64,000 nt of DNA from NCBI GenBank assembly GCA_964035545.1, contig OZ037771.1, positions 507,628 to 571,627 on the forward strand. Direction: 5' to 3'. Each line of letters starts with the position of its first letter. Position 1 is the stretch's first letter. The position numbers and the translations under genes were made by a program. This DNA comes from Bugula neritina. Lineage: Eukaryota; Animalia; Bryozoa. The notes under the pieces were generated by a model that was not told the DNA's origin, did not search any database, and worked only from the letters and a program-made list of their open reading frames with translations. Positions 34,062-56,122 of this stretch are shown piece after piece.

Positions 34062-37000
34062 CTATTGCATAGCTCTTAGACATTCCCAAGTAGTGAAGTA
34101 GGGCAACTCCCCATTCTTCTATTATTCTCCTAAAAATAATAATACTCGGCAATAGCAAGGAACCCTGTGTGTACCCTGTATGTACCTGGTGTATACTCAG
34201 CTAATAGCAGATTCAGTATTAAACTACTACGATAATATCACCCTCTGGCAAATCTGTTACTGTTGTGCAGCAAATAAAACGCTAACCTAATCTTATTGGT
34301 CAGTTTCTCTCTCTCCTTTGAATAGTGCATTGTGATTGGATCATCTTGAGACCATGTCCTGGATTCTATGGTCCAGTGTCTAGAGTAGTCCTCTAACATC
34401 TTCATTAGTTTAGCTCGGTGAGCCAGTTTCCTGCAAGAGAAAGCAACTACCAGAGAAAATGCAAGAGAAAGCAACTACCAGAGATGATGCAAGAGAAGAC
34501 AACTACCAGAGATGATACAAGAGAAGACAACTACCAGAGATGATGCAAGAGAAGACAACTACTAGAGATAATGCAAACACACCGGCACATACAAGCTCTG
34601 GGTTTTCAATAAACCCTACCAGTTTTAAATAATTTTGCACTTTCTACAAAATCCTAAAACTAGAAAACTGGTTTACAGGAATACAACTCTGAATATTAAA
34701 TTCAAGGGTAAATACTTGAACAAATCAATACATTATTGTTATAATATATTATGTTTAGTGCTATATACTGTTATAGATGATACGCCATCAAGTGACTTAC
34801 TCTAACTGACTATCTCTGTTGATCACTGGGTTACTTTCATTATGTATAGCGTGGTTACTTTCAACTCGATGGGCTTGCTTAGTTACCATGGAAACAGATT
34901 GTCTGTCTTTAGAGTGTTTCTGGTTATGCTGCCGAGTGGATGAGAGGGGAGAACTTTTCCTTCTTGCTGACAGGATGACCGCTCGAGCTCCACCCTGCAG
35001 CGTGTAACATTATTATGCAATAGTATATAATATTACCTGCATACACTATACATACTATAATAATACATACACTATACATACTATAATAATACATACATAC
35101 ACTATACATACTATAATATTACCTGCATGAAATATACATACTATAATATTACATACACTATACATACTATAATATTACCTGCATACAATATACATACTAT
35201 AATATTACCTGCATGAAATATACATACTATAATATTACATACAATATACATACTATAATATTACATACATACAATATACATACATACATACATACATAAA
35301 TGCAATATACATACTATAATAATACATACAATATACATACTATAATATTACATACTATAATAGTATACAATAACAGATCTGTAAGGAATAAACAAACCTT
35401 TAGGCTGGGCTTTCTCTTTGATGCAACACTGTACCTATAAACAGAACAGGTCACTTTATTGGAAGCAGAGCTTAAAACATGTTAACAGGAAAAGGTAGAG
35501 GAAAAATAGGGAGAGTTGGTTTAGGGGATATAACTGGTTAGAGTATGTTAAATAGAGAGAGGAGTAATAGATACTAGTACAACATACAGTATAAACTAGA
35601 GAGAGGAGTATTAGATACTAGTACAATATACAGTATAAACCAGAGAGAGTATTAGATACTAGTACAACATACAGTATAAACTATAGAGAGGAGTAGATAC
35701 TAGTACAACATACAGTATAAACTAGAGAGAGGAGTAATAGATACTAGTACAACATACAGTATAAACTAGAGAGAGGAGTAGATACTAGTACAATATACAG
35801 TATGAACTAGAGAGAGGAGTAATAGACACTAGTACAACATACAGTATAAACTAGAGAGAGGAGTAGATACTAGTACAACATACAGTATAAACTAGAGAGA
35901 GGAGTAGTAGATACTAGTACAACATACAGTATAAACTAGAGAGAGTATTAGATACTAGTACAATATACAGTATAAACTAGAGAGAGGAGTAATAGATACT
36001 AGTACAACATACAGTATAAACTAGAGAGAGGAGTAATAGATACTAGTACAACATACAGTATAAACTAGAGAGAGGAGTAATAGATACTAGTACAACATAC
36101 AGTATAAACTAACAGAATAGATCAGTTAGCCAAGCAACACTACCCCAACTCCCACTCATGTGTGAATGTGACAGTTACAGAAAGTATCTATACTGTAAGT
36201 CAACTATCTCACAGGTGTTTACCTTGTAGATAGGGACGGGCTCCTTGAGCTCCTGCGAGTGTTCTAAAATTAAAAAAAGTTCTCAACCATTATCTATTTA
36301 CTTGATTCAATAGCAATACAGGCCCTTTCAATAGAGAGTTTTACTCTCCTAATAAAACATAAAAATATCTCGTCACACTCTTCACCTCTAGTCATGTCAT
36401 CTTCCAAATAATATAACAACTTCATAATGTGGAGAAAGAAAACTGTAAGCAGATTAACACACAGCATGATATGTAGCCTGTGATAGCGTGTACAGCGAAA
36501 CTACCTGACTAGTGTGGTGAAGCAATCTCGGTAATTTCTAAAATATAGCAAGAACATAAGCTATATATAGTTTTAGCTACGATGTCATGCAGGGAATAAT
36601 ATAGCTAACTTACATGCCAGCAACAACATAAAATAAATTTAACACTGGAAAGCTAATTTCCAAGGGATGTATAGTATGGACAAACAACTGGTCACTGAGG
36701 CAACAAATCCACAGTCTGAGAATATAACTACTCAGCGCAGGTAACTGTTTGATGAGCAGGTAAATTTTACCTACACGTTTGGAAGACAGGTGATCCTCGG
36801 AGTTGACACTTTCAGGTGCAGGTTTCTTTATATAGTAGTCATACATGTCATCAGTTAGTGGTGGTAGAGCTGCAGGGGGTAACCTTGACTTGAACTACAC
36901 GATACAATTTATCGTCTTTAAATACAGGAACATATGTATACACTACAGTAATAAGTGCAGAGCACACTACAGTAACATGTGCATAGCACACTACAGTAAC

Positions 37001-40000: not shown

Positions 40001-43000
40001 CACCAAAGTATTTTTTGCTTTTAGCTCAGCTTGAAATGTATTTCTGAAATAATATGGAAACCAGTGTGTGAAGAACCAAATTGCATATTGTAACAGTTAC
40101 TGAAGAATCAAACAGTTTATTGGTAACTTTACCGGTGAATTATCTGTTTGCACAGCTGAAGTTGTTTTTTTAGATGAACAGAACACGAATATCATGTAGA
40201 ATGCATGCTGCTGAGAAATATCATGTAGAATACATGCTGCTGAGAAATAATAAAATCTTGTATTTTGGTTATTCAAAATAAAATGCTAGAAGAAAGATGC
40301 ATCATTATTGAAACTTACATTTTTGCTGCTTCAACCTTCAATTTGGCAGCACAAATCAGCTCTCTCTTTATACTAAAAAGCAGTAGCATCAATTTGAATT
40401 TGTTTTTGCATAGGAAAATATACGTATGAAAACATGTATATTAGCTTACTACACCTGTCTTGAATGCAATGGCCTTAAAATCCAATAGATATAGTACTCT
40501 ACACAGTACACTATAAATGCTTACCCACTACTGTTCAAGTAGTCTGGGGAAGGAGACTGGATGTCAGATGTCAGATTCTTCAACGAGGGATGAGATTCTA
40601 TGATTGACTGAAAATAGAACATCAAATGTAATAGCTGGGACTAGTAGTTAGGTATATACAGCTAGTAGTTAGGTATATACAGCTAGTAGTTAGGTATATA
40701 CAGCTAGTACAGGTATATACAGCTAGTAGTTAGGTATATACAGCTAGTAGTTAGGTGTATACAGCTAGTAGTTAGGTATATACAGCTAGTAGTTAGGTAT
40801 ATACAGCTAGTAGTTAGGTATATACAGCTAGTAGTTAGGTATATACAGCTAGTAGTTAGGTATACACAGCTAGTAGTTAGGTATACACAGCTAGTAGTTA
40901 GGTATATACAGCTAGTAGTTAGGTATATACAGCCAGTACAGGTACATACAGCTAGTAAACAAAAACAATACCTGCTTCACCAGCTGACTCCAAGCCACGC
41001 TGACTACAGAAGTGCTACTGGCTGACTCAGATGGTGTCCCAAGAGAGAGTTTTCTCAGCAAGTATTGAGCTTCAATGTCCACCTTTGGGTCTAATGGAGG
41101 TAATGTCCTGCTCGTGGGTCCTGGAAGGCAAGAAAGCACGTCGCTAGATGATGGAGTAGAACATTTCTCTCTACGAGTTGATTTTCTTCTGGAATTCTTA
41201 CTTTCTACAATATAACATAATATAATATAATATATATACTTTCTATAATATAATATAATGTATATACTTTCTACAATATAATATAATATAATATAATATA
41301 CTTTCTATAATAAAAATTTTAAAAATATAAAACTGATTGACATACTGATGCAAATAGTTTTGAATTCTTTTACAGTAAAGCTTTAGTTCCTTGAAAACAT
41401 GCAGTTGAAATAATGTGCAGAATGGAAATAGCGACTGTGGCATATGATGATGATATAAAACTAAATAGAGAGGGGTGCATCAAAATACGCTATAGACAAT
41501 ACCAGTTTACCATAATCAGGTCTATGTAATTGATTATAGTATAATAAATTAATAGTTGAGGGGTTGACTATTAATTGCAGAAAGCATATCTGAGACAGAG
41601 ACGTGCCAACCGCCTACCGTATTGAGTCGAGGCTACACTATTAGGAACACTGGCAATACTAGTTCTTTGGTCTCCACAGACTGCTTTATTAGTCTCTGTG
41701 TTCTAAAACATACCACCATCCTGGTAGACATTGTGCTGACAACTTGAGAATATGTGCTAACAATTCACTGCAAGCAGTTCACCGCAAACAGTTCACTGCC
41801 AACAGTTCACTGCAAACAGTGGATACATTTAACTGCTTAGTGAGATGAACACAATATCTCTCAACTGTAACTCTGAGCGTACTCTGTGGGCAAGCTTATT
41901 ATGTCAAGTATAGAAGCAGGGTGTTTTCTGCTATTTATATAGTTGCTATAGCAACAATCACTTACTGTCAAACCCTTCACTGGATATGACTGGACTTGTG
42001 GAGTTATCACTCCAATGTTATTCTCATAATCTATTGAACTCGCCGAGTTCCGACTGACACGAGACTGCCTACTGGTCATTTCATCATCAACAAGAGATGT
42101 TACATCTTCCGTGATTGGCTGAAATGGTAATACATCATTCATACATTATTTATGCATTAGTTGTGTATATATTAGTCATCCATATTAGCTATATCTTGGG
42201 AAAGTTTATAGTCATCATCACTGTGAGAAAACCCCTGATGGAAATACTTTTTTGTTAAATTGGGCTAAGGACTTATTCAGATGGGGCACAGGAGCAATTA
42301 TGACTGGATGCTCTTCACCAATGGCCTTTGCCTGAGTTCAAACCCATGACTTGGTATTTACTAAGCCCCTCGACCTGGCTGCTTCCTATAATATATTAGT
42401 TACACATTATGTAATACCTTCAACAGACTCTTCTCATTGTTAATGAGTAACATCAGAGCATGGTCAACATCTACATGATCGTCACCCTGAAACCACAACA
42501 TAAGGTCAAGGTCAATCGTAGCAAAACTCATTCAACAGCATGATATCTTGAATAGCTTTAGTCAACAACCCTGAAGTTAACAGATATGGTAGAATTAATA
42601 TTCCCAGGAAACAGTGCACATATCTGCTGTACTGAAACTGTCAGTGTGCAATACTGCACCATCCAGTGGCAGTGTCGTCCATAATCTAATCTAATAACAC
42701 CTGCTTGCATATACCATATAACTATAGCATGCTATAATATAGTATGACTATTGCATTATGGTACAGTATGACTATTGCATTATGGTACAGTATGACTATT
42801 GCATTATGGTACAGTATGACTGTTGCATTATGGTACAGTATGACTATTGCATTATGGTACAGTATGACTATTGTATTGTGGTACAGTATGACTATTGCAT
42901 TATGGTACAGTATGACTATTGTATTGTGGTACAGTATGACTATTGCATTATGGTACAGTATGACTATCTGTTGCATTATGGTACAGTATGACTATTGCAT

Positions 43001-43148
43001 TATGGTACAGTATGACTGTTGCATTATGGTACACTATGACTATTGCATTATCATACCACAAAGTTACTGCAGCTTTTACCTTCACAGATACTCTAAGCTG
43101 AGTCTTCATACTTCCAGGTCCAATAAACTTCCAGTTACTTCCAGGCAT
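34062..43148 (-). CDS. FAM194-domain protein (ERICH6/C3orf20-like)
   Basis: Many small phase-compatible exons. The spliced core DGSQVICYSTGLPAIV...GGTCSFYYSNGELCYMHSKSCGLWFYPGGRIRKGW...LKLNEHISVKI matches the FAM194 pattern (DG...YxSGxxAI, CYxxNG, GxxxxxW, LNxxIxVxI). The termini are less certain. Confidence 0.68.
35554..36110. repeat. Intronic ~41-bp minisatellite TAGAGAGAGGAGTAATAGATACTAGTACAACATACAGTATAAAC
   Basis: ~13 copies. Confidence 0.9.
37689..37889. repeat. Intronic 24-bp minisatellite CTGAACAGTAGTC(T/C)ACAGGCTATA abutting a 3' splice site
   Basis: ~8 copies; sense units end TGTTCAG. Confidence 0.88.
39379..39922. repeat. Two intronic minisatellites: ACAGTAAGTACAT/ACTGTATAT type (39379-39690) and 23-bp CACCTACTCTACCACCTCCAGTT (39754-39922)
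   Basis: Tandem copies. Confidence 0.85.
40640..40957. repeat. Intronic 21-bp minisatellite CTAGTAGTTAGGTATATACAG
   Basis: ~15 copies. Confidence 0.9.
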
Positions 43149-43560
43149 AGTTGACCTTCAGCAAGTCAATCTGTGAAACAGTGAACTATAGACAGTAGTA
43201 TATACACCACGAGTTTAGCACCATATACTCAGTAATATATACTAATACATCATATACTCAGTAATATATACTAATACACCATATACTCAGTAATATATAC
43301 TAATACATCATATACTCAGTAATATATACTAATACATCATATACTCAGTAATATATACTAATACATCATATACTCAGTAATATATACTATTACATCATAT
43401 ACTCAGTAATATATACTAATACATCATATACTCAGTAATATATACTAATACATCATATACTCAGTAATATATACTATTACATCATATACTCAGTAATATA
43501 TACTAATACATCATATACTCAGTAATATATACTAATACACCATATACTCAGTAATATATA
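42743..43560. repeat. Two minisatellites flanking the first coding exon of the FAM194-like gene: 24-bp TATGACTATTGCATTATGGTACAG (42743-43050) and 28-bp CATCATATACTCAGTAATATATACTAATA-like (43219-43560)
   Basis: Tandem copies. Confidence 0.88.
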
Positions 43561-43992
43561 TACCACGAGTTTAGCATCATATATTTACTATCTATTCTTA
43601 ATTATTGTTTTAGAATCTCTAAGACTGTAGCTTGTACACTCAGAAATAAACTTGTAGTATGTTATACATTAATACAATATACTGTAATACAACATATTAC
43701 AATAATATAATGTACAATAATAATGCCATGTACTATAATAATACAATGCACTACAATACAATGTGAAATAATAATACCATAGAAAATAACTTACAATGTA
43801 AAAGATAACAGATGTTTTGCCATTCTACATTATTGTTAGCAGAATGCATTACTTCAAGTAATTTCTTGTGTTTATGTTGAGCAGCAACCACTACAAACAT
43901 CTTTAATTGACTAATCTAATGAAGCATTATGTTGTATTACAGCAATTATATATTTTTTATTTTGAGAGACTTTAATGAACAACTAAACAACT

Positions 43993-44404
43993 AAACATGT
44001 ATGCACTTCCTTACAGTAAACATGTATGCACTTCCTTACAGTAAACATGTATGCACTACCTTACAGTAAACATGTATGCACTACCTTACAGTAAACATGT
44101 ATGCACTAGCTTACAGTAAACATGTATGCACTACCTTACAGTAAACATGTATGCACTACCTTACAGTAAAAATGTATGCACTTCCTTACAGTTAACATGT
44201 ATGCACTACCTTACAGTAAACATGTATGCACTACCTTACAGTAAACATGTATGCACTACCTTACAGTAAACATGTATGCACTACCTTACAGTAAACATGT
44301 ATGCACTACCTTACAGTAAACATGTATGCACTACCTTACAGTAAACATGTATGCACTACCTTACAGTAAACATGTATGCAGTACCTTACAGTAAACATGT
44401 ATGC
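43993..44404. repeat. 25-bp minisatellite AAACATGTATGCACTACCTTACAGT, ~16 copies, downstream of the TIR-STING stop
   Basis: Near-perfect tandem copies. Confidence 0.92.
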
Positions 44405-44582
44405 AATTTTTGTTTGTTATGATAAATGGAAATTTTCAGTAATTTAGATACAGTCACACAATCAAACCTGATAATAACTAAAAGTAAGAATAAAAGTGTT
44501 AAACTACTCAAACTTGTTAGGATCATATTAAAAAGACGTAGCACACAATATTGATACTCCAGGGAACTTCAGGTGGTGGTTA

Positions 44583-47500
44583 CTAAGTGCAGTGAATTAT
44601 TTGTAGGGAGAGCTGTCACTGTATATCTTCAGTGAAACTGGAAACGCTAGAAAAGCATATACTGTAATTATAATGAATATAATAACTAGTATAAGCCTGG
44701 TTTCACCACACAGAACACAGTTTATGGGTTAATAAGTTCATCATAGTGTTTATAACATGTATTACGGAGGAGTTACCTTGCAGTCTCAAGGCAATTATAT
44801 TCTCACCTATCTCCGCTTTGTCCTGTATGGTAAGTAAGTCAGTAAGTAAGGTTTAAGTTTGATTGTTAAGTATATTGAGGTGTAAATCCAATTGCAGCCC
44901 AACATTGCCAGTATTGAAGAGCAAAACCAATACTTATTTCCCCTGTACCCAAATATATGGCCATGGTTTCTGCAACCCATTCATTCCAGCCACATGATAT
45001 GATATGCCAGAGGATGTACCCTCCAAGTACAATAGTAAGTGTATGTTTAGGTACATGCGAAACTACAGGTGTAAGTGGTGCTTAAAGCAGAGGGCATTGA
45101 GAGTAGAGAAAGAGCATGCTGGAGGTTATATATTATATATTTGAAAAAGAGACCAGAATAAATATATATATATAACAGGTGAGTATTTATCACTATATAG
45201 TGATAGGTAATAGTGGAGAGGTGTAACTGAAAATAGAAAAGGGCACAGGCACGATCAATATTACATTTTATTACTGTAAAAAATTACAAAGAAATGATAA
45301 CTTTATAGAAATTGAAGCAACATAATGTAAATACTAGTAAAAAATCATTTGCATAGAAAATATGGCTTAATATCAACAAAATCCTTCAAAAGTTTGATTG
45401 TTTCAAAAATGGACTTCTTAACCACCAAGTCTGTGTAAAGAACTAACAAAGAATAGTTGTGATAATAATTTCTTTTTTTTATAAGTTATGCCCGACTAGC
45501 ATTAGTTAATATGTATACTGATGACTTAACTGCTAGAGTGAAGATACAGCGGCACGGTAGACACTCCAGCCTACCAGCTTGGCAAATTAGCTTCAAAACG
45601 TAACAAGTGTTTCAAAAGTCAGTAAAAAATAAAAATTTAAAACCTTTCACCAAAAATAGAAGAGATAAGAGAATGGAAAAAAGATATAGAACTGCATGCA
45701 TATAATAACTAGTAAACTAACTCCACTGTCATAACCTCGTCATACCAAACCACGACTTGATGAGAGACGTCAGTTTTCCTTTATTTCTACAACAGGGCAA
45801 GCAGCTGCAAGGAACTGTATTCGTATTGATATGAACTCATTATATCATGTCTACACAACTCCTTAGGCATATAATAGAAACTACACCATTGCACAGTTGA
45901 AAGAAATATAAAATACATTATATTTAAATGGCCCACAGCTTTAAATTCCACCAACTTCTGGACCTCTATTGATGTACAAGTAATGCAATACATGTGAAGT
46001 GAAGTGTAGCCCTTACCTCTCACCTGCAGAGTCTGAAGTTGCTGTAACGACTGCTCCTTGGCTGAAATATAAAACACAGTTTTGAAGGCAATGACTGTAG
46101 TAAAAACGCATAACGCTATCACAGAGTAGCGTAGGACTGAAGGCAATGACTGTAATACAGACACGTAGAGCTATCATAGAGTAGCACAGGACTGGCGTAC
46201 ATACATGACACTCACCTTGTTGCTTCTCTTTCAGGATCACTTCTATCTGGTTAATTATTGTTGAGGATAAATCAGCTCTCCCGTCAGCATCAGCTGAGAA
46301 ACAGGACAAAGAGTATAACTAACATGTGACTAACAGATGATACAAAGAGTATAACTAACACGTGACTAACAGATGATACAAAGAGTATAACTAACATGTG
46401 ACTAACAGATGATACAAAGAGTATAACTAACACGTGACTAACAGATGATACAAAGAGTATAACTAACATGTGACTAACAGATGATACAAAGAGTATAACT
46501 AACACGTGACTAACAGATGATACAAAGAGTATAACTAACATGTGACTAACAGATGATACAAAGAGTATAACTAACATGTGACTAACAGATGATACAAAGA
46601 GTATAACTAACATGTGACTAACAGATGATACAAAGAGTATAACTAACACGTGACTAACATGTGACTGTCATGACAGTTCCACAACAACACGAATGTCCTA
46701 TTCAGTGGCCTAGTATTGCAGATTATTAAATGCAGTGAAATGAACAGGGAATCGTTGAAGTGAAAACTGACTGCCTACTTGTAAAGAAGACGAGTCTAAA
46801 CATATAGAGGGAGCGGGAAAGCGGGCTATGGGAGAGAACTTGGTCTAGAAGGTCTTTGAAGTTCCTGACTTGGTGCATCATCTCGTCCTTTGACAGTCCA
46901 GCCAATCCCTCGCGACTCATTTCATACATGGATACCACAGGAGTTGCGTACTCTAACAATGCGTAATACTCCTGGGAAAACCCTACATGTGTGTACTATA
47001 TGCTTCAAGCACATTTGAAAACATTGAAATAGTTTCACAAAATAAAATATGATCTAAAAACAAAAAATAGTAAATTATTTAATTAATAAAGATTAGAATT
47101 CTTGTTGACTTTATTTAAATCACATACAATACTCAAACTAAAAACCAACATTTTATATTAAATTATGCTAACTTTGAAAAAATGAATAATTTTAGAGGTT
47201 CAACTTTTAGGAACTGCATTTTCATATTACATATATGAGAGAAAACCAGTTTGAAAACCCAACACGAATATGCAGCAAATAAACAAGTGTGTTCATAAGT
47301 TACATTCTTATAACAAACCTTGCCTTCGTTGTCCTTCACGCTGTAGATGTAGTTGTTGTAGTTGCGAGCAATGACACCAGCACGGTTGACCTTAGCGGCA
47401 GCGAGGGGCGCCAGTTTCTGGATGCGAGGGTCACAGTTGGAGATGTCGCTATGACAGTTCCCGCTGGCAGGCACGAGAATGAACAGGGTGGGCAGGAACG

Positions 47501-50010
47501 GCTTACCCTCCTGGTTGTAGTACTCGGAGCTCTCACATCTGTCTTCAAGGGCTGGAAATAATGATGAAGATGATTGTTATAGTAGTAGGGTAATGTCATG
47601 CTGCATGCTTCAATCTCTATGTAGTATATATGTTTGAGCAACTTTAACAACACACAGTTAATGAATATAATAGATGAGTTATTGTCAAGGGAGATAATAG
47701 TCTTGAGGTGACAGGTCTGTTTGGGAAGAGGATGGACACAGTAACACAACTCCACTCAGTTCTGAAATGAAGAGTGAAGCAGTACCTGATTGCTACAAAT
47801 AAACACATCCTGTAACAGTTAGACAGGTGTGATTCACCAGGAATTTAGACAGTTGTCAGGTTTCTCCTGTCCAAATCTTTGTTTGACAACCAGTTACTGC
47901 TAGCAGATTTACCACAATTGGCAGTGAAACAAGCATGACTCATTTGCTTACGTCTAAATAATAGAAATTCTCTGTGCAACTAGACACATTGATAGCCTAT
48001 GCAGTGCATTCATGGAAATTATTGATAAAAACAAATTCATGAGAAAGTATTTGGAAATTGAGGCCACTAACACATAACTCTCCAGTTTTACAGTTATAAT
48101 TTAGTGGGTGAGGCAATGCAATATACATGGTTAGACAGTGGTGTGTGCAGACATGTGCATAGGAAAGCTTAGATAAAAGACGGGCAAGTCTAGAGCTCAA
48201 AGAGTTCACAGGGAATACTCACAGGGAATACTTACAGGGAATACTTACAGGGAATACTTACAGGGAATACTTACAGGAAATACTTACAGGAAATACTTAC
48301 AGGGAATACTTACAGGGAAATATGAGTTTCAGATAGCCGTAGTAGTAACTCCACACCAAACCCTGAGCCACATTGCCACATGGTAACGACACTTTCAGCG
48401 GAATATCAGGACCTACAGTCACATGACCAGTAGTGTCACCTGACTAGAGATGTCACATGACCAGTAGTGTCACCTGTCTAGAGATGTCACATGACTAGCA
48501 GTGTCAGCTGACTAGAGATGTCACATGACTAGCAGTGTCAGCTGGCTAGTAAGAACTCACCTAAGCTGTCTAGAAAACTTTGAAAATTTCATTAAAACCT
48601 AAAGTTTGCGTTTTAATAAGTTGCGCAGACTATCCACTGTTAATGAGTTGGCATGAATCCATCATAACAAAGTAAATAATGACATATTTTTGCTAGTAGA
48701 TTTAATTAGCATAACATTTACCTGCCACAGCCTGACTTATTCTCAGCAGATCAATGTCGGTACCTTTGTACTCAAGATAGGAGTATGAGTAGACACCCAA
48801 CCTGGTTGTCTTGGCCTCTTCCTCAGACAAGTCCAAGCAGACTGGCACCAGCAGCTGACGTTTGTGTGTGTTATTGTTGTGGATGAATAGGAGAGTCTCG
48901 TGGTCAAAGTAGTTGCTAGAAGATGATGATAAAGATGATGGGAGCTCTTAGCCTTACCAGTATGTGGGGTTTTGGACAATAAGTTGATTAAGAGGTAAGA
49001 TTCAGGACTGAGCCAGTAACTAATAGGTGAAGTGTAAACCAAGGGATGCATACGAGCAAAACTCAACCAAAGAAGCCGTTCTTAACTGTTGTTTAGAAAG
49101 TTTATTCAAAGAAACTTTAATTTAATTTGTTGAAATTTGTTTGGCTAATTTTCAAAAAGAAAATCTACTGCTCTGAAGAAGTCACAAGGAAAAACAGTCG
49201 AGAGTTGTCTGACCAGCTATAATTGATACCTTTTCAGGTAGCTCTTGCTACCAGCTATAATTGATACCTTTTCAGGTAGTTCTTGCTAAGGAGGACTACC
49301 ACTCTTCGTGACTTCTGCACACATCTCTCTATGTTATCAGCTAGAGGTACGCCCAGTTTAAACTCCAGGCATATTGCTACTTTGAAGGAGTTTGACTTCA
49401 GGTAACTAGCAATCCGTTCAGCTAGTAGTCAGTAGGAGATAAATAGTAACAATCACATCAATGAAATAACACTACTAGAAACTGAAACCAGCTGCAAAGT
49501 TCAAATATGTTTATACAGCTTTAAGAAATAAGAACAATACATTTTAAAAAACAAACATTCAATTGAACCCTCAAATTACCTGATGGATTTAAAGATGGTA
49601 TACTTTTAACAATAAAACATTAAATTTTTTGCAGTAGTGTATTTTGATTAATACATTATTGAAATTTTACCCGTTTTGCAGTAATTAAAAATTATTTATA
49701 CTTTATTTTCAGACATCAGCTATAGTTTTATGCAAACAAAACTATTTATAGACAATAATTTATTTTGTGTCAACGCAAACATTTCTGAGCTGAGAAAAGA
49801 CTGAAAAATAAAAATTACATTTATAGCTAGTAATTATACTACATAAGTTCTTGTGCAGTATCAACAAAACATATTACAAATGAGCTTCTACTAACACTTA
49901 ATATACTCTAGCTTACCAACGTCTTTATCTTCATAAGAGAATGCTATAAAACAATGGTACTCTAAGCTCCCATCTAAACTGGGTACCTCGCAGTCTCTTT
50001 CAGCATCCAT
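44583..50010 (-). CDS. TIR-STING fusion: N-terminal TIR domain + STING cyclic-dinucleotide-binding domain, no transmembrane segments
   Basis: Phase-consistent exons 50010-49917, 49421-49268, 48915-48722, 48412-48314, 47551-47319, 46971-46779, 46293-46216, 46061-46024, 44822-(44807 or 44777), 44646-44583. TIR: YHCFIAFSYEDKD...FKLGVPLADNIERCVQKSRRVVVLLSKNYLKSNYFDHE...LLVPVCLD. STING: NVAQGLVWSYYYGYLKLIFP, LFILVP, NRAGVIARNYNNYIY, LEYATPVVSMYEMS. Confidence 0.93.
46307..46665. repeat. Intronic 39-bp minisatellite ACAAAGAGTATAACTAACA(T/C)GTGACTAACAGATGAT, ~9 copies
   Basis: Near-perfect copies. Confidence 0.9.
48208..48318. repeat. 13-bp tandem repeat (9 copies) multiplying the 5' splice site of the STING dimerisation-helix exon
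   Basis: Sense unit CCCT|GTAAGTATT; plus-strand units start at 48208, 48221 ... 48312. Confidence 0.92.
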
Positions 50011-50244
50011 AGATCTAAAGTTTCAAAACTTTCATCATCAGAAAACTAATAAGCAACCGCTAATAGTACGTTCACTTATGTTTGGCTCATCCTATATCAT
50101 ATAAATATATGTTTGTTATTTCAACTCTTCATATACCATAAAAGGAAAACTATTTTATCACTTGCAAGTTCCATGAGTTACAAAATGTTAATGAATGCAA
50201 CATTCACTTTGGCAATGCTTTGGTTGGCTACTCTAATTTTAAAG

Positions 50245-50900
50245 ACTTGCTAGAAATATTTTTTAAAATTTTATTGCTGAAATAGTTAATAAAAATCACA
50301 TTATATTTATATTATAATAAATAATATATACTATACAGTATGCTAATACTTAATCTTATAGTTATACTATAAATTTTATGGTAATAACTATAACTATAAG
50401 TTAATTTACTATAAGTATAATAATTATAAGAAGTTTTAGTATAAATATTTTATTTGCAAGAAAATTATTAAACTAGGTCTGACTATACAGTATACTTTTG
50501 AGTATAATTGATAGCAAAAAATGACTTGCTAGAAAATTTTTTTAAATTTCATTGCTGAAATAGTCAATAAAAATTATATTATATTTACATTATAATAAAT
50601 AACATTTACTATACAGTATACTAATACTTAATCTTATAGTTATACTATAAATTTTATAGTAATAACTATAAGTTAATTTACTATAACTACTATAACTATA
50701 AGTATAAGTATAAGACTAAGTAAAATTTAGTAATACCAATACTCAATAGTAATACTAATACTAATAGTATAATAATAATTTCACTATAATAATTATAATT
50801 TCAATTTCTAAGAATTTTTAGTATAAATATTTTATTTGCAAGAAAATTATTAAACTAGGTCTGACTACACTTTTGAGTATAATTGATAGCAAAAATGACT
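50245..50900. repeat. Imperfect ~280-bp AT-rich tandem duplication in the TIR-STING/PPAT divergent region
   Basis: GACTTGCTAGAAA...ATTGCTGAAATAGT...AAACTAGGTCTGACTA...TTTTGAGTATAATTGATAGCAAAAATGACTT occurs twice, from ~50245 and from ~50523. Confidence 0.8.
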
Positions 50901-50939
50901 TTTAATCATTATGATTATCATGATAGTATTTAATTTTCT

Positions 50940-51390
50940 AGATAGCGTAAAACTAAACTAGCAACACTAAATTAGAAACTTGCAGCAGATTTCTAGTGAG
51001 TCCTTGGGTAATAACCTAGATGCATATTTTAACGCGCAGCGAAAAGTTTCCGGGGTCGCCTTAAAAAGCCATCCAAATACTGATCGGGTTTGCTGATTTC
51101 AGCTAAATTCGCGCTAATAAACTAAATGCCAAGGCAAAACCAATTGCTAATAGGAAATCGAAAGACCATTGGGTATTCACTGTAAACAAAGAAAGAACTT
51201 TAACCCACGTGGACTATTTTCGGAGACCAAGCTCTCTATTGCCGCATGCCTGGTTAGCCAGTTGAACCATCAAGTATAGCTGCAAGTTGATGTAGTTGAG
51301 TTTTGGCGGACACACTCATTAATAATCAAAGTGATCGCAGTTAAATCTTTGATTGAACCACAAACTTTTTTCCAGCTTTAATTTGAATTT
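50940..51390. promoter_or_regulatory. Probable bidirectional promoter between TIR-STING and PPAT
   Basis: Locally CpG-richer core between two divergent ATGs 1.4 kb apart; CACGTG E-box at ~51207; flanked by AT-rich tracts. Confidence 0.45.
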
Positions 51391-51394
51391 AAAA

Positions 51395-54300
51395 ATGGAG
51401 CATTACTGTGGCGTGTTCGGCTGTATCACAGCCGGGCCGTGGCCAAACGAGTCCAACTTAAATGTTGCTCAACTCATACGGAGGGCTCTAATTGGTCTCC
51501 AACATAGGTAAGCATTGACTTTAGTTAAAGTTTGTAATTTACTTTTAGTTTTAGCATTGACAACGATTTTGATGTGCAATTACCAGAGGTTTAATCGAAA
51601 ATAACTGTATAAATAATAATTGATTAATATCAATATCAATATGACTATGTTAATCATAATGATAATGTATAACTATAAGTACGAATTATTGAATACCAAG
51701 TCCAATATGATAATAATTATAATATGAATGTAATAATATCAATATTATTATATATTACTAATTATAATATATTTATAATTTAAATTATAAACGCTGATGT
51801 AAGGTAATATCGATGTGCCTATGATAATCATAATGATGGGGATATACGGATAGCATCTTGAAGTGATCTTGATATTCATGTAGACTTGAAGCTTTAAAGC
51901 TAAAAAAACATTAGATTATCAAATTTAATCTCTAATACTCGAATACAGTTTTGTGAAAATGCATGTAGCACTATTACTATTAGTATTAATAATAATTTAT
52001 TTTAAACATCCAAGTCTTTTTTAATATTATAATTAAATTTCAGTTTAGCCAGACAGTATTCATATTCATATTGAAACACCACCTTTGACAGATAGGCCTC
52101 TTGACAGAAATATGTATTTAATTTTATTTGTCTAGAAGTAGATGCCACTTAGTTTTAGTAAAGACTTGCAACTACTGCAAACTTTTATCTAATTCACTTC
52201 TGCTGGGTGGTTTCCTTATCCTAGCCCTAATCAAATGGTTGTAATTCTAGAGGCCAAGAGAGTGCTGGCATTGTGACTAGCTACGGAGGGGTCAATGCGA
52301 AGGACATGTTTTCATGGAAAGGTCACGGACTAGTTAATCAGGTAAGGCTACCATATGTAATAACATGCTGTCGCTATATGTATGCACTGTGTTACCAAAG
52401 TATACATAACTCAAGCATGTTTAGAATGTTTTGCATGTGTTCTAAGCTTCACAAAATTACAGGACCCAATTGAAACTAATAATCCCTGTTGCTAAGTCCC
52501 TATTGGTTGATCGCTTGTAGCACAAGAAAAAAACCTTTATATGTAAATTTTTTGATAAGTTATTGAGTACTAAAGTTACAGTTCACTTTTAGATTTTCAC
52601 AGATGACGTGTTGTCCAAGTTGAAAGGTAACCTTGGGGTTGGTCACACCAGGTACTCCACGTATGGTGGCAGCTCTGATAATAACACTATTAGTGTGCAG
52701 CCGTTTGTGGTAGACACTGTCTATGGACTGCTGGCTGTTGGTCACAATGGAGAGTTGGTGAACGCTAAGCAGCTTCGACAGGATGTGAGTTCGTGTTATG
52801 TTTTCCTTTGGGTTTCAGTTCTGATCTATTAGTGGAAACAGGAGGGGATCGTGTGTTAAGGGCGGAGTGAACAGGCAGGGAAAGATAACTACTAGTATGA
52901 CTTGTAATTGTACTGGGAAAATATATTTGATTTGGTGGAATCAGCTCCTAGCCTCCAAAATATGAGTACATAGTATTTTCTACTAGAAAATGGAGCGTTT
53001 AGTTTAATAAATATTGGTGTTGGATAAAACAGCTTGCCATTAGCTAGATGGCTTAGGATGTAATAAGGATATGATTTCTATGACATGACATGAACGCCAT
53101 CTTACACTGTCTTGCTCCTGTATGTAGAATTAGCTACATTATATAGAGAATTGAACTGCAGGTACTGAAAAGGGGCGTCGGCCTGTCCTCCTACACCGAC
53201 AGCGAACTCATCACCCAGATGCTGACTTTGTCTCCCCCTGAGGACCCTGATGACTGGCCAAGTCGTATTCGCCAGTTTATGGAGTCATCTCCCCTGGCCT
53301 ACTCTCTGGTCATCATGCACGCAGACAAGCTGTACGCAGTGCGAGACCCGTACGGCAACAGACCTCTCTGTATTGGTAGACTGAATCGCCTTGTCAACTG
53401 TGAGTGTGAATATGAGCTTGACATGCTCCTGCATTCACTCTGAGTCAGTGGGCAGCAGTAGTAGGGTTGCGGGTGGGGCACTGGGCACCCTCAACTTGAG
53501 TGTCTGATGAATAATATCTGTTGTATCTTATTTCACTTTGAATATTCCTGATGCTTAGGGAATGCTAATATTCTCAGTCTTTCAAGAGACAAATTCTCCA
53601 AACCAGAACGGGGAGGGAATTTACCAACCTACTTCTCTGCATTCTGTGTTGAGTATTAGTAGTTGAAGTGTTTGTGACTGACTGACGGTCAATGTTTATA
53701 TTATAAGGTAGTTATAACGGTGCACGTAAGTTACTTACTCAGTAGTCTGGAAACTGGTGTAAGTGAAACAGTGTAACACCGCTAAACGGCTAACACTCGT
53801 TCTTGGGTTTCTTTCTGCACTTTGATCTGTACTCTCTATTCTATTTGTGTTTCAACTTGTCCACCATCTCCACCTGTTACTTTCTCTTTTACTCTCACTC
53901 AATTGCTATCTCTTGCTCTCTCTCTTAGTCTATATTTGTATGCTCTGTATATATTATTTAGGTGTGGCTGATAATACCCAGGATGCTATAGGATGGGTTG
54001 TGTCCTCTGAAACATGCCCCTTCTACAGTATTGGAGCTGAGATTATAAGAGAGGTGCTTCCAGGTGTGTGAAACCAAAGCATGTTAACTGTAGAGTATGA
54101 CAATAACTAGTCATGATTGGAACGCTGTGATCAATGCTAGGAATTACAGTCTAGTTATTTCCATAGCTGCAATTTAGTTTCTAGTGGTTTTCTTGCATGC
54201 ATATATGACAAATGTATGCGTATGATGTGTATTTAACTATGTAGAGGTCATGTATATGATATGTGTGTATATATATGTAGAGAGTATGTTTAAATGTAGA

Positions 54301-56122
54301 GGTCATGTATGCACGATGTCTTGTAGGCGAGATAGTAGAGATCAGTAACCAGGGTGTCAAGTCACTAGAGGTCGTTGCTAGACCTCCTTCCCGCCCTCCC
54401 GCCTTCTGCATCTTTGAATACGTCTACTTCTCTCGACCGGACAGCTATCTTGAAGGTAGGATATGATGCCATTGCGTTAATTTCCTGTAGCTCTGTAATT
54501 CGACTGCACATTTCATGTCTGGCCTCGTTTCCATCTAGGTCAAATGGTGTACACTGTACGCAAGAAGTGCGGGAAGATGCTCGCTATAGAGTCGTACGTA
54601 GAGGCTGACGTTGTGTCAACAATACCAGAATCAGCGACTCCGGCAGCTATGGGTTACTCTGAGCACACTGGAATACCCTATGTAGAGGTAGGACAACTTC
54701 TATATTACTGCTGTATGTTGGTATTGTAATATCTACTATAATATTCATTTGTAACAGTTGAAGCTCTTTTAATGTGTAATGCAGTGCCATTGAGTGGCAC
54801 CCAATAGATATGATACTTCTATGATGTTATGCAACTTCTGCCAGGATATTAATCAGACTATTACATAACATGTTGTCACCTGTTCTAGGTCTATTGGCTT
54901 AGCCATTTTTTGTAGGTGCTGTTAACTGTGTATTTACAAGCTTACCAGCCTGCTCCTTTTTATCAACCTGTAAATTATATCAATTACCCTCAACCTGTGA
55001 TTTTTGTGAACAGTTTCAGCAAAACCTTTCCCAATCTACATTATCTTACTAATATTCACTTAACTGGACATGTTATGGTGCTCTGTAAGAACAAGTATGT
55101 TGTGTTGCTGTCACACAGGTGCTCTGTAAGAACAGGTGTGTTGTGTTGCTGTCACACAGGTGCTCTGTAAGAACAGGTGTGTTGTGTTGCTGTCACACAG
55201 GTGCTCTGTAAGAACAGGTATGTTGTGTTGCTGTCACACAGGTGCTCTGTAAGAACAGGTATGTCGGGAGATCTTTCATTCAACCCACCACCAGACTCAG
55301 ACAGCTGGCTGTGGCAAGCAAGTTCGGTCCTTATGAAGATAACATCAAAGGGAAGAGAATTGTGTTGGTAGACGACTCCATAGTCAGGGGGAATACTATG
55401 CAGCCAATAGTAGCCCTGTTGAGGTCATCTGGTGCTCTAGAGGTGCAGTGTTTACCTCCTCTTCTACTCTACTATCTGTTTCTATCTCATGAATTTACTA
55501 TTTAATTTGTTGCTAAATCTGGTTAAATTCTTTACGCAAAATGCACTATATACTTATCTTAGCTGCTTTATTCACCCAGGTACATGTGAGAATTGCCTCC
55601 CCTCCCATCAAGCACCCTTGCTATATGGGAATCAATATCCCAACAAAGGCTGAGCTCATAGCCAACAGAGTGGAGCTGGACAAACTCGCCGAGTATTTTG
55701 GTAATATAACCTTGACCCCGTGTTGACCTTGTCATTACCAGTTTTACGAATAGCTTGTCTAGTTAACTAATGTTTAGTTCCTCTCTCAATACTAACTGAT
55801 ACTTACTCTCTCTCACTATTAACTGACACTTCCTCTCACTACTAACTGACACTTCCTCTCACTACTAACTGATACTTACTCTCAATACTAAATGATACTT
55901 ACTCTTACTACTGACCCTTACTCTCACTACTAACTGATACTTACTTTCTCACTACTAACTGACACTTACCTCATGTTGATGTTACCAGGTGCCGACAGTG
56001 TACGATACCTCACTGTGGAGGGGCTGAAGAAAGCTGTTATGGAAGGTGCACAAGTGAACAGAGAGATAGGGCAGTGCACTGCTTGTTTAACTGGTGAATA
56101 CCCTGTAGATATCACCTGGTAG
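51395..56122 (+). CDS. PPAT: Amidophosphoribosyltransferase (glutamine PRPP amidotransferase)
   Basis: Ten in-phase exons. N-terminal nucleophile [56 protein letters not shown] motif [23 protein letters not shown], and [10 protein letters not shown] (Fe-S ligands). TAG at 56120-56122. Confidence 0.97.
55078..55264. repeat. 41-bp tandem repeat (4.5 copies) spanning the PPAT 3' splice site at 55241/55242
   Basis: Unit GTGCTCTGTAAGAACAGGT(A/G)TGTTGTGTTGCTGTCACACAG starting at 55078, 55119, 55160, 55201 and 55242. Confidence 0.93.

What the first reader, a model, noticed from the sequence alone, without database searches (positions are those of the whole stretch)
44583..50010. Soluble animal TIR-STING with intact ligand-binding and TIR catalytic residues
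Seen: an intron-containing gene fusing TIR directly to STING, with no TM helices. Residues equivalent to human STING S162/Y163/G166/Y167, R232, R238, Y240, E260 and T263 are present. The TIR keeps a Glu in the SxWCxxE position (SNYFDHE), though WC is replaced by YF. Known: TIR-STING is the architecture of bacterial CBASS NADase effectors and occurs in a few invertebrates such as oyster, where the output is poorly understood. Inference: a cyclic-dinucleotide-gated TIR enzyme or adaptor, i.e. a membrane-independent innate immune pathway.
Basis: partly seen in the sequence, partly recalled or inferred. Interest (0 to 1): 0.8.

Follow-up and report, generated by a model that had tools for sequence, protein, structure and literature searches.

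The report
Soluble TIR-STING gene of a bryozoan
This is a real, intact animal gene that joins a TIR signalling domain directly to the cyclic-dinucleotide sensor STING with no membrane anchor. The type is already known from oysters, and here it is the only STING gene found in a bryozoan-like genome.

Summary
On the minus strand, seven GT-AG exons (50010-46216) encode 348 residues: a TIR domain, then a STING ligand-binding domain.

- **Gene model.** It aligns end to end with the RefSeq TIR-STING of the bryozoan Watersipora subatra (44% identity, E 4e-112). Every resolved intron has the same position and phase. All six listed exonic polymorphisms are synonymous.
- **No membrane anchor.** No segment reaches transmembrane hydrophobicity. 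A divergent PPAT gene 1.4 kb upstream bounds the start.
- **STING pocket.** Ser162 plus Thr263 is the 2'3'-linked type.
- **TIR.** Glu89 aligns with the catalytic Glu of plant and bacterial NADase TIRs. Tyr85 replaces the usual Trp, and the BB-loop proline is lost.
- **Genome context.** This is the only STING locus found in the 216-Mb assembly. Mab-21/cGLR-like loci exist.

Animal TIR-STING is already known (oyster, PDB 6WT6/6WT7). I also find it in Solemya, Lingula and Watersipora, and shared fusion-specific introns suggest one old lophotrochozoan fusion. It is a new member of a known kind. Ligand gating and TIR output remain inferred, and no RNA evidence was available.

The parts
49917..50010 (-). 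Exon 1. The ATG is at 50010, and the exon holds residues 1-31 and the first base of codon 32. It starts the TIR domain (beta-A motif Y-H-C-F-I-A-F-S).
   Evidence: An in-frame stop lies 4 codons upstream and the donor is G|GTAAGC. The N-terminus is collinear with the start of Watersipora P0007.
49268..49421 (-). Exon 2: the TIR core with the BB-loop (E-F-K-L-G-V, no proline), up to ...N-Y-L-K. It ends in phase 2 inside the Ser codon of the S-x-aromatic-x-x-x-E motif.
   Evidence: Pfam TIR_2 E 4.2e-8 and TIR E 3.1e-7. The same intron position and phase occur in Watersipora and in both Lingula modules.
48722..48915 (-). Exon 3: the rest of the TIR, with Tyr85 and Glu89 (the catalytic-equivalent Glu). 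It ends in phase 1 at the TIR|STING junction.
   Evidence: Splice sites are. The Glu aligns with the Glu of the SNC1, AtTIR and AbTir motifs.
48314..48412 (-). Exon 4: the linker and first STING helix (G-N-V-A-Q-G-L-V-W-S-Y-Y-Y-G-Y). It holds the equivalents of S162, Y163, G166 and Y167.
   Evidence: Pfam STING_LBD positions 1-20. PDB: oyster TIR-STING 6wt6 E 2.3e-6, and human chains 153-173.
47319..47551 (-). Exon 5: the STING core and lid, with the equivalents of R232, R238 and Y240 (R237, R243 and Y245 in this protein).
   Evidence: Pfam STING_LBD E 8e-15. Query residues 18-74 match human residues 194-250 without gaps.
46779..46971 (-). Exon 6: the STING E-Y-A-T-P segment (equivalents of E260 and T263) and the following helices.
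   Evidence: Pfam STING_LBD E 4.5e-10. Query residues 5-54 match human residues 258-307.
46216..46293 (-). Exon 7: the end of the ligand-binding domain and the start of a charged helical tail (to residue 348). It is followed by a strong donor, AAG|GTGAGT.
   Evidence: The acceptor and phase match the Watersipora last-exon boundary.
46024..46061 (-). Putative exon 8 (13 residues, Gln/Leu-rich). The continuation and the stop codon are unresolved.
   Evidence: It has a good acceptor, in-phase donors and exon-like GC of 0.53. There is no homologue or RNA support. Read-through would reach a TAG at 45790, with AATAAA at 45785.
50011..51394 (.). A 1.4-kb AT-rich, repeat-rich intergenic region shared head to head with the PPAT gene. 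It is the probable bidirectional promoter region and leaves no room for upstream membrane-helix exons.
   Evidence: PPAT exons lie on the + strand from about 51395 to 56119. GC is 0.27.
49212..49288 (.). A 38-bp x 2 tandem duplication that copies the exon-2 donor. It is polymorphic.
   Evidence: Tandem Repeats Finder. A contig of run X1 skips 38 bases, from 49211 to 49250.
48208..48319 (.). A 13-bp x 8.6 array that starts at the exon-4 donor. Each unit carries GTAAGT, and only the first donor keeps the reading frame open.

Best explanation
This is the functional, single-copy STING gene of a bryozoan-like animal. It encodes a cytosolic TIR-STING receptor of about 350-360 residues.

**Shown here.** An N-terminal TIR domain is joined through a short linker, across a phase-1 intron, to an animal-type STING cyclic-dinucleotide-binding domain. 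There is no transmembrane region. The coding sequence is under purifying selection.

**Inferred.**
1. The STING domain dimerises and binds a 2'3'-linked cyclic dinucleotide made by the genome's own cGAS-like (Mab-21 family) enzymes.
2. Lid closure and side-by-side oligomerisation then bring the TIR domains together.
3. The clustered TIR domains act on NAD+, by hydrolysis or cyclisation to a cADPR-type product, using Glu89.

On this view the output is metabolic or second-messenger based and independent of membrane trafficking. It would work like the bacterial CBASS TIR-STING effector and the NADase activity cited for oyster TIR-STING, while being a member of the animal lineage.
For: **Gene reality.**
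- Seven in-phase GT-AG exons.
- 44% identity, E 4e-112, end to end with Watersipora TIR-STING.
- Identical intron positions and phases.
- All six exonic differences listed in an independent DNA run are synonymous. Intron 7 shows 3 of 4 non-synonymous in its read-through frame.

**Ligand site.**
- The equivalents of S162, Y163, G166, Y167, R232, R238, Y240, E260 and T263 are all present.
- Ser at position 162 plus Thr at position 263 is the 2'3'-type combination described for human STING and Sp-STING1 (PMC9980059).

**TIR.**
- Glu89 aligns with the Glu of the catalytic motif in the plant SNC1/AtTIR and bacterial AbTir alignments. These are the best PDB matches of the orthologue's TIR.
- An aromatic residue (Tyr85) sits at the AbTir W204 position. 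Tyr occurs there in 2 of 12 cyclase TIRs (bioRxiv 10.1101/2022.05.07.491051).
- That preprint lists oyster TIR-STING among TIRs with NADase activity.
- Hurieva et al. 2026 report glutamate-dependent cADPR synthesis by many animal TIRs.
- The BB-loop lacks the R-D-x-x-P-G proline typical of TLR/MyD88 adaptor TIRs. It looks like the D/E-F-x-L-x-x-G loops of AbTir and plant TIRs.

**Pathway context.**
- Only one STING locus turns up in the 216-Mb assembly with three different queries.
- Mab-21_C loci score above the Pfam cut-off.
- Two cGLR-like loci with the G-S...D-F-D motif lie on the same contig.
Against: - There is no transcript evidence for this locus. The only run holding it is DNA.
- A Glu at this position also occurs in TIRs such as TLR2 and IL-1R9/10, where no NADase activity was found.
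- The conserved Trp is replaced by Tyr in this species only.
- Nothing here measures ligand binding, oligomerisation or NAD+ turnover.
- The C-terminus is unresolved.
- The cGLR candidates have only weak profile support exon by exon (E 0.004-0.07; E 0.94).
- I could not read the primary oyster biochemistry, because Morehouse 2020 is not held.
Confidence: 0.5

Rival explanations
1. The gene and ligand sensing are the same, but the TIR is a non-catalytic scaffold. On this view, ligand-induced clustering of the TIR domains recruits other TIR adaptors (MyD88-, SARM- or TICAM-like) and drives NF-kB or IRF-type transcription, as in Toll-like receptor signalling.
For: - Culbertson and Levin place the oyster TIR-STING TIR among animal TIRs near TICAM1/2 (PMC10732462).
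- MyD88 TIR structures are among the PDB matches, at E about 1e-4, only slightly weaker than the enzyme TIRs.
- Oyster work links CgSTING to a TBK1-IRF axis (PMC8218723).
- A Glu alone does not prove catalysis.
Against: - The bryozoan BB-loop has lost the Arg-Asp-x-x-Pro-Gly motif. Oyster, Solemya, Lingula module 1 and the unidentified relative P0018 keep it, and adaptor TIRs depend on it (the functional role of the proline is from general knowledge of TLR4 and MyD88 mutants).
- The catalytic-position Glu and an aromatic four residues before it are kept.
- The best PDB matches are NAD+-cleaving TIRs.
Confidence: 0.3
2. The gene is a decaying or non-signalling copy. It could be a cyclic-dinucleotide sponge or decoy, or an unexpressed pseudogene, and its domain residues would be conserved only by recent descent.
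For: - No RNA run was found to hold the locus.
- Tandem arrays duplicate several splice sites and could disturb splicing.
- The Trp-to-Tyr change and the BB-loop changes are derived.
Against: - All seven exons are open, with canonical splice sites.
- All six listed exonic polymorphisms are synonymous.
- Every key ligand residue is kept over a divergence of 56% from Watersipora.
- It is the only STING locus found in the genome.
Confidence: 0.08
3. The fusion is a gene-model artefact. On this view a TIR-only gene and a STING-only gene lie next to each other and are transcribed separately.
For: The joint rests on prediction, because no cDNA was available.
Against: - Exon 4 has no start codon. The first Met of the STING part lies deep in exon 6.
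- The phase-1 junction intron is at the same column and phase in Watersipora, an oyster and both Lingula modules.
- P0018, the next closest relative, is an uninterrupted TIR-STING ORF on an 1813-nt contig.
- Only 309 nt separate exon 3 from exon 4.
Confidence: 0.04
4. A membrane-attached isoform exists. Retention of intron 7 would add a C-terminal tail with one strongly hydrophobic stretch, giving a tail-anchored TIR-STING rather than a soluble one.
For: The read-through frame after exon 7 stays open for 68 codons. It contains a 19-residue window with a Kyte-Doolittle mean of 2.05, comparable with the helices of TM-STING controls.
Against: - That DNA is a 55-bp tandem duplication.
- It follows a consensus donor.
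- 3 of 4 polymorphisms there are non-synonymous in that frame.
- The Watersipora protein ends with a short charged tail.
Confidence: 0.05

Closest known systems
Watersipora subatra 'stimulator of interferon genes protein-like' XP_067948818.1 (P0007, 359 aa)
   Same: - It has the same architecture, length and N-terminus.
- It is 44% identical over 341 residues.
- All resolved introns share position and phase.
- It lacks the BB-loop proline in the same way.
- It has the same S162/T263-type pocket.
   Different: - Watersipora keeps Trp at the position four residues before the catalytic-position Glu. This gene has Tyr there.
- Watersipora ends in a short charged tail encoded by the last LBD exon. 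This gene has a donor after exon 7 and at least one more candidate exon.
- The Watersipora gene spans 39 kb, against about 4 kb here.
- No PPAT neighbour lies within 10 kb of the Watersipora gene.
Oyster TIR-STING (Crassostrea gigas, PDB 6WT6 apo and 6WT7; 'Metazoan TIR-STING fusion')
   Same: - It is a soluble TIR plus animal-type STING LBD.
- PDB sequence matches to exon 4 (E 2.3e-6) and exon 5 (E 8e-5).
- Related oyster proteins align end to end at 28-31% identity.
- The junction intron and three LBD introns share position and phase with the oyster S. echinata gene, the only oyster gene mapped.
- The TIR Glu is conserved.
   Different: - Oysters keep the R-D-F-x-P-G BB-loop and the Trp.
- Oysters have Gly at the S162 position (and Gly at T263 in C. 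virginica), a long C-terminal extension, several paralogues, and a TIR intron at a different place.
- This gene is single-copy, with the canonical Ser/Thr pocket.
Bacterial CBASS TIR-STING effector (e.g. Sphingobacterium faecium SfSTING, c-di-GMP-activated NADase filament; PMC9402430)
   Same: It has the same domain order (TIR then STING), no membrane anchor and a catalytic-position Glu. It is the expected working model: ligand-induced oligomerisation activating the TIR.
   Different: - Different lineage. This gene has introns and an animal-type LBD that passes Pfam PF15009.
- PADLOC defence models match only the TIR, not the LBD.
- The LBD clusters with lophotrochozoan animal STINGs.
- There is no adjacent CD-NTase operon, and the pocket is of the 2'3' type.
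- The literature treats the two fusions as convergent (PMC10732462).
Canonical transmembrane STING (human TMEM173; insect and coral STINGs)
   Same: The ligand-binding domain is homologous, with all main cyclic-dinucleotide contact residues identical to human.
   Different: - This gene has no four-helix membrane domain. A TIR takes its place.
- No C-terminal TBK1/IRF3 tail is seen in the resolved sequence.
- Outputs that depend on ER-to-Golgi trafficking, such as autophagy and TBK1 recruitment, are therefore not expected to work in the same way.
Lingula anatina LOC106169291 (P0005, 704 aa): tandem TIR-STING-TIR-STING
   Same: Each module is 31% identical to this protein over about 300 residues. 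The phase-2 intron in the Ser codon of the S-x-W motif and the phase-1 junction intron are shared.
   Different: - The module is duplicated within one protein.
- The second TIR lacks the Glu and the Trp.
- The first TIR keeps the BB-loop proline.

Membership tests
Metazoan TIR-STING fusion (oyster type) | N-terminal TIR domain | tested here: met
   Pfam TIR_2 E 4.2e-8 and TIR E 3.1e-7 on exon 2 alone. Residues 6-147 align without large gaps to the TIR of P0007, which passes both Pfam TIR models.
Metazoan TIR-STING fusion (oyster type) | C-terminal animal-type STING ligand-binding domain (PF15009) | tested here: met
   Exons 4, 5 and 6 hit STING_LBD collinearly, and the exon 5 and 6 matches are well over the cut-off. 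PDB STING chains match.
Metazoan TIR-STING fusion (oyster type) | Both domains in one transcript and one polypeptide | tested here: inconclusive
   The GT-AG joint is in phase, with the same intron position and phase in three other TIR-STING genes. The STING part has no start codon of its own. No RNA run was available for this locus.
Metazoan TIR-STING fusion (oyster type) | No transmembrane domain | tested here: met
   The maximum 19-residue hydropathy is 1.06 in the resolved 361 residues, against 2.0-2.4 in TM-STING controls. The start is bounded by PPAT 1.4 kb upstream. Caveat: the C-terminus is unresolved.
Metazoan TIR-STING fusion (oyster type) | Conserved cyclic-dinucleotide contact residues (stacking Tyr, lid Arg, pocket-floor Ser/Glu/Thr) | tested here: met
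   S169, Y170, G173, Y174, R237, R243, Y245, E265 and T268 correspond to human S162, Y163, G166, Y167, R232, R238, Y240, E260 and T263, by ungapped offsets to full-length human chains.
Metazoan TIR-STING fusion (oyster type) | Binds a cyclic dinucleotide, with ligand-dependent activity | not testable with these tools
   This needs recombinant protein.
NAD+-cleaving (enzymatic) TIR domains | Catalytic Glu at the start of helix alpha-C | tested here: met
   Glu89 aligns through the orthologue with the Glu of the SNC1, AtTIR and AbTir (E208) motifs.
NAD+-cleaving (enzymatic) TIR domains | Large aromatic residue four positions before the Glu (AbTir W204 position) | tested here: met
   This gene has Tyr85. 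All other TIR-STINGs examined have Trp, except Lingula module 2. Tyr is seen in 2 of 12 cyclase TIRs.
NAD+-cleaving (enzymatic) TIR domains | Measured NAD+ hydrolase or cyclase activity | not testable with these tools
   A Glu is also present in TIRs without detectable activity.
Bacterial CBASS TIR-STING effector | Bacterial-type compact STING domain | tested here: not met
   PADLOC defence models match only the TIR (PDC-S66 E 3.9e-13 for P0007, E 0.0031 for exon 2). They match neither the LBD of P0007 nor exons 5 and 6. The LBD lies inside a lophotrochozoan animal clade with support 91/88.
Bacterial CBASS TIR-STING effector | Encoded in an operon next to a CD-NTase | tested here: not met
   This is an intron-containing eukaryotic gene. 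Its neighbours are PPAT and another spliced gene. The nearest cGLR-like locus is 160 kb away.
Canonical transmembrane STING | N-terminal four-helix membrane domain (PF23417) | tested here: not met
   The N-terminus is a TIR domain and has no hydrophobic helices. A TM-STING query (P0023) matches only the LBD exons in this genome.
Canonical transmembrane STING | C-terminal tail with TBK1/IRF3 docking motifs | tested here: inconclusive
   The resolved tail is a short Lys/Glu/Gln-rich helix with no L-x-I-S-type motif, but the real C-terminus is not established.

The most novel reading that the evidence does not exclude
A whole animal lineage (bryozoans) may run cGLR-STING immunity with no membrane STING at all. 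Its only STING would be a cytosolic TIR-STING whose TIR has shifted from an adaptor-type to an enzyme-type BB-loop. It would act as a cyclic-dinucleotide-gated NAD+ hydrolase or cADPR synthase, so it would work like a bacterial CBASS effector. The fusion would be one ancient event in the lophotrochozoan ancestor, because introns specific to the fused gene are shared by bryozoans, a brachiopod and bivalves. It would not be a recent oyster oddity.
Probability: 0.3. Interest if true: 0.7.

Novelty: new member of a known kind. Interest (0 to 1): 0.45.

Why it matters
Animal TIR-STING is known structurally from oyster, but its output is still debated, and reviews call it rare. This gene adds three things.

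1. It places the architecture in a third lophotrochozoan phylum. Fusion-specific introns are shared across phyla, which argues for an old, maintained invention rather than a recent accident.
2. It is a case where TIR-STING appears to be the only STING in the genome. The animal's cyclic-dinucleotide response must therefore pass through a TIR and cannot use ER-Golgi trafficking.
3. It is a natural variant pair. Bryozoans have lost the BB-loop proline, while oysters keep it. That pair could separate the adaptor hypothesis from the enzyme hypothesis.

It offers a compact, single-copy system for asking what a eukaryotic TIR does when STING binds ligand. It is not a new kind of system.

Tried and rejected
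**RNA evidence.** Laying it gave only genomic contigs. Expression and splicing remain unshown.

**Downstream exons.** I dropped them for two reasons:
- 44764-44944 is a high-copy repeat, with depth about 4560 against about 90.
- Many loose contig ends fall at 44793-44830.

**Whole-protein steps.** So I did not run whole-protein database searches, structure prediction or complex prediction on this protein. I used exon pieces and the orthologue P0007 instead.

**Searches that led nowhere.**
- The big representative search with exon 5 found only 18 proteins, the best at 45% identity. The organism's own protein is not in the library.
- The top PDB hits for exon 5 were designed Kelch-repeat proteins (SAKe). 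They are sums of many weak repeats and are spurious.
- A whole-genome Pfam Mab-21 (PF03281) search gave nothing at E <= 0.001. Mab-21_C (PF20266) did give hits.
- There is no PPAT within 10 kb of the Watersipora gene.

**LBD tree.** It places this protein with Watersipora (90/89) and P0018 (92/97). It does not resolve whether all TIR-STING LBDs form one clade.

**Papers not held.** Morehouse 2020 (PMC7572726) and the final Li 2023 paper (PMC10527820) were not held. Statements on oyster NADase activity are second-hand.

**Organism name.** I did not test it. Other agents' notes say Bugula neritina.

Full report
**1. What is in the sequence**

The gene lies on the minus strand. Stop-to-stop translation and direct reading give seven exons with canonical GT-AG borders and consistent phases:

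| Exon | Window coordinates |
|---|---|
| 1 (ATG at 50010) | 50010-49917 |
| 2 | 49421-49268 |
| 3 | 48915-48722 |
| 4 | 48412-48314 |
| 5 | 47551-47319 |
| 6 | 46971-46779 |
| 7 | 46293-46216 |

- Exon GC is 0.40-0.56, against 0.25-0.42 in the introns.
- Pfam on single exons gives TIR_2 (E 4.2e-8) and TIR (E 3.1e-7) for exon 2.
- Pfam gives STING_LBD for exon 4 (profile positions 1-20), exon 5 (19-103, E 8e-15) and exon 6 (97-162, E 4.5e-10), in collinear order.
- A 38-nt exon 8 (46061-46024) is plausible from its splice sites and composition.
- After exon 8 the reading frame either uses one of two donors or runs on to a TAG at 45790, next to an AATAAA at 45785. I could not decide which.
Candidate exons there fall in a high-copy repeat, with depth about 4560 against about 90 and many loose contig ends.

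**2. Is the fusion real?**

No RNA run holds the locus. The one run that holds it is genomic. The joins therefore rest on comparative evidence, and that evidence is strong.

- A HMMER scan of 1.84 billion representatives with exon 5 found only 18 proteins. One is XP_067948818.1 of the bryozoan Watersipora subatra (P0007, 359 aa). It passes Pfam TIR, TIR_2 and STING_LBD.
- My spliced model aligns with P0007 from residue 6 to 340 at 44% identity, E 4e-112, and no gap falls at an exon joint.
- Exact exon mapping of P0007 on its own locus shows every resolved intron at the same residue and in the same phase as here:
  - phase 2 in the Ser codon of the S-x-aromatic-x-x-x-E motif;
  - phase 1 at the TIR|STING junction;
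  - phase 1 after L-P;
  - phase 0 before E-Y-Y;
  - phase 1 after the last LBD strand.
- The next nearest relative, P0018, is an uninterrupted 368-residue TIR-STING ORF with flanks on an 1813-nt Logan contig. That is what a transcript would look like.
- The genomic run differs from the assembly at six listed exonic sites, and all six are synonymous third-position changes. In the frame that would read through intron 7, three of four differences are non-synonymous. The exons are therefore coding and under purifying selection.

**3. No membrane anchor**

- The highest 19-residue Kyte-Doolittle mean in the 361-residue model is 1.06. Other TIR-STINGs stay below 1.6, and transmembrane STINGs used as controls reach 2.0-2.4.
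- The start codon is preceded by an in-frame stop, and the first residues match the Watersipora start.
- Upstream, 1.4 kb away and on the other strand, is a complete amidophosphoribosyltransferase (PPAT) gene. Hidden upstream helix exons are therefore unlikely.
- One caveat remains. If intron 7 were retained, the tail would contain one hydrophobic stretch (mean 2.05). That DNA is a 55-bp tandem duplication behind a consensus donor, and its polymorphism looks unconstrained.

**4. Ligand-binding residues**

Ungapped offsets to full-length human STING chains in the PDB give this mapping:

| Exon | Query residues | Human residues |
|---|---|---|
| 4 | 12-32 | 153-173 |
| 5 | 18-74 | 194-250 |
| 6 | 5-54 | 258-307 |

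- S169, Y170, G173, Y174, R237, R243, Y245, E265 and T268 of this protein therefore correspond to human S162, Y163, G166, Y167, R232, R238, Y240, E260 and T263.
- In the preprint of Li et al. (PMC9980059, section 9), Ser at the 162 position and Thr at the 263 position go with 2'3'-linked ligands (human STING, Sp-STING1). Asn and Ser at these positions go with 3'3'- or 3'2'-linked ligands.
- From this I infer a preference for a 2'3'-linked dinucleotide.
- The oyster proteins have Gly at the 162 position, and C. virginica also has Gly at the 263 position. The bryozoan pocket is therefore the more canonical one.

**5. The TIR domain**

The motif spans the exon 2/3 joint, so I used the orthologue's contiguous TIR against the PDB. 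The matches were:

| Structure | E-value |
|---|---|
| Plant SNC1 TIR | 6e-6 |
| AtTIR | 2e-5 |
| Acinetobacter AbTir | 8e-5 |
| MyD88 | 1.4e-4 |
| Oyster TIR-STING | 1.7e-4 |

- In those alignments the Glu of D-H-E pairs with the Glu of the plant W-C-L-x-E and the AbTir W-T-N-Y-E motifs. AbTir E208 is the catalytic residue.
- In this gene that residue is Glu89. Four residues before it, Tyr85 replaces the Trp found in every other TIR-STING examined except the second Lingula module.
- Manik et al. (bioRxiv 10.1101/2022.05.07.491051) find an aromatic residue at that position in all cyclase TIRs: W 9/12, Y 2/12, F 1/12. They also list oyster TIR-STING among TIRs with NADase activity.
- Hurieva et al. 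2026 (bioRxiv 10.64898/2026.04.20.719644) report Glu-dependent cADPR synthesis by many animal TIRs. They also name Glu-bearing TIRs with no detected activity.
- The two bryozoan proteins have lost the R-D-F-x-P-G BB-loop that oysters, Solemya, Lingula module 1 and P0018 keep. Their loop resembles the D/E-F-x-L-x-x-G loops aligned from AbTir and plant TIRs.
- Taken together, this tilts me towards an enzymatic output, but it does not prove one.

**6. Genome context**

- The window is C7:507628-571627 of a 216-Mb, 321-contig assembly.
- Three whole-genome searches hit only this locus, apart from one weak (E 0.07) probable chance match elsewhere: Pfam STING_LBD, a Lingula LBD protein, and a TM-STING protein. 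This is exon-wise six-frame searching, so a very divergent copy could be missed.
- Mab-21_C scores above the Pfam cut-off at three loci.
- Two loci flagged by other first-stage notes lie on the same contig, 160 kb and 1.09 Mb away. They carry the G-S...D-F-D-V and P-A-V-T...D motifs of cGAS-like enzymes. Their Pfam hits are collinear but weak, and pig cGAS is the only PDB match (E 0.94).
- Candidate synthases therefore exist, but my check of them is only partial.

**7. Relation to known systems**

- PDB 6WT6/6WT7 ('Metazoan TIR-STING fusion', oyster) matches exons 4 and 5 directly.
- A profile search with bryozoan, oyster and brachiopod sequences recovered TIR-STINGs from Saccostrea, Crassostrea, Ostrea, Solemya and Watersipora; the earlier representative search had found the Lingula one.
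- This protein aligns end to end with them at 28-34% identity.
- In an LBD tree it pairs with Watersipora (90/89), then with P0018 (92/97), inside a lophotrochozoan clade (91/88). The interior of that clade is unresolved, so the tree neither shows nor excludes one origin of the fusion.
- Gene structure is more informative:
  - The phase-1 intron at the TIR|STING junction sits at the same alignment column in this gene, Watersipora, Saccostrea echinata and both Lingula modules.
  - The phase-2 intron inside the Ser codon of the TIR motif is shared with Watersipora and both Lingula modules.
  - Three LBD introns are shared by all four genes.
- I read this as one fusion event before these phyla diverged. 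I did not check whether unfused TIR or STING genes carry the same introns.
- PADLOC models of bacterial defence proteins match only the TIR, not the LBD. The gene is therefore not a member of the bacterial CBASS TIR-STING family, though it may work like one.
- Culbertson and Levin (PMC10732462) call eukaryotic TIR-STINGs rare and convergent with the bacterial ones. That agrees with my result, except that the architecture is wider in Lophotrochozoa than their text suggests.
- I found no paper in the held library on STING in bryozoans.

**8. Mechanism and verdict**

- **Shown:** an intact, constrained, single-copy gene for a TM-less TIR-STING with a canonical 2'3'-type pocket and a TIR that retains the catalytic-position Glu.
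- **Inferred:** dimeric ligand binding, then oligomerisation, then TIR clustering, then NAD+ hydrolysis or cyclisation (confidence about 0.5).
- **Main rival:** a scaffold TIR recruiting adaptors (about 0.3).
- **Lesser rivals:** a decoy or pseudogene, a mis-joined gene model, and a tail-anchored isoform.
- **Novelty:** a new member of a known kind. The main added value is the phylum, the apparent absence of any other STING, the derived BB-loop, and the shared fusion-specific introns.
- **Organism:** other agents' notes call it Bugula neritina. I did not test that. My own evidence is only that the closest protein is bryozoan.

Noticed in passing
window 51353-56119, + strand: A complete multi-exon amidophosphoribosyltransferase (PPAT, purine synthesis) gene lies head to head with TIR-STING, with its start about 1.4 kb from the TIR-STING ATG. 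The arrangement is not seen within 10 kb of the Watersipora orthologue.
   Followed up: partly
window 49212-49288, 48208-48319, 48418-48549, 46306-46659: Minisatellites sit exactly on splice sites of this gene.
- A 38-bp x 2 copy of the exon-2 donor is polymorphic: a contig with one copy exists.
- A 13-bp x 8.6 array has a GTAAGT in each unit and starts at the exon-4 donor.
- A 34-bp x 3.9 array lies just upstream of the exon-4 acceptor.
- A 36-bp x 9.8 array ends at the exon-7 acceptor.

For the two donor arrays, only the first site keeps the frame open. Other first-stage notes report the same kind of donor and acceptor ladders elsewhere in this genome.
   Followed up: partly
window 44764-44944: A short element of roughly 30-35 bases is present at very high copy number in the genomic run (summed depth about 4560 against about 90). 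Many contigs end at 44793-44830. It is probably a dispersed repeat.
   Followed up: no
window 42741-43051, 43222-43560, 43992-44405: Three long, clean minisatellite arrays lie between TIR-STING and the next minus-strand gene: 24 bp x 12.8, 29 bp x 11.7 and 25 bp x 16.6, at 92-97% identity.
   Followed up: no
L004 (G000:C7:731500-737500, minus strand) and L005 (G000:C7:1658500-1662500, plus strand): Two divergent cGAS-like (cGLR) candidates carry the G-S...D-F-D-V and P-A-V-T...D active-site motifs. L004 also has a Thr-Pro-Val repeat ORF and a Lys-rich exon. Exon-wise Pfam support is weak (E 0.004-0.07).
   Followed up: partly
G000:C7:5182419-5182906, C3:2587167-2587604, C1:26553459-26553686: Three further loci score above the Pfam cut-off for the Mab-21 C-terminal domain. 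Whether they are cGLRs or developmental Mab21L genes was not examined.
   Followed up: no
L009 (Lingula anatina LOC106169291, P0005): One brachiopod protein carries two complete TIR-STING modules in tandem. The second TIR lacks both the catalytic-position Glu and the Trp, which suggests an active/inactive pair within one chain.
   Followed up: partly
P0008, P0009, P0004 (metagenome and Logan proteins): These proteins carry two STING ligand-binding domains and no recognisable TIR. Their domains fall in or beside the same lophotrochozoan LBD clade. Their source organisms are unknown.
   Followed up: no
P0021, P0028, P0030, P0031 (oyster TIR-STINGs): Oyster TIR-STING pockets have Gly where human STING has Ser162. 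C. virginica P0031 and the oyster-like Logan protein P0030 also have Gly at the Thr263 position. The bryozoan proteins keep Ser and Thr. This may relate to the 2'3'-cUA signalling reported in oysters.
   Followed up: no
window about 33000-42145, minus strand: Another spliced gene of unknown identity starts downstream of TIR-STING. Its open exon-like pieces include one at 42145-41864. It bounds the TIR-STING 3' end to above about 42200.
   Followed up: no
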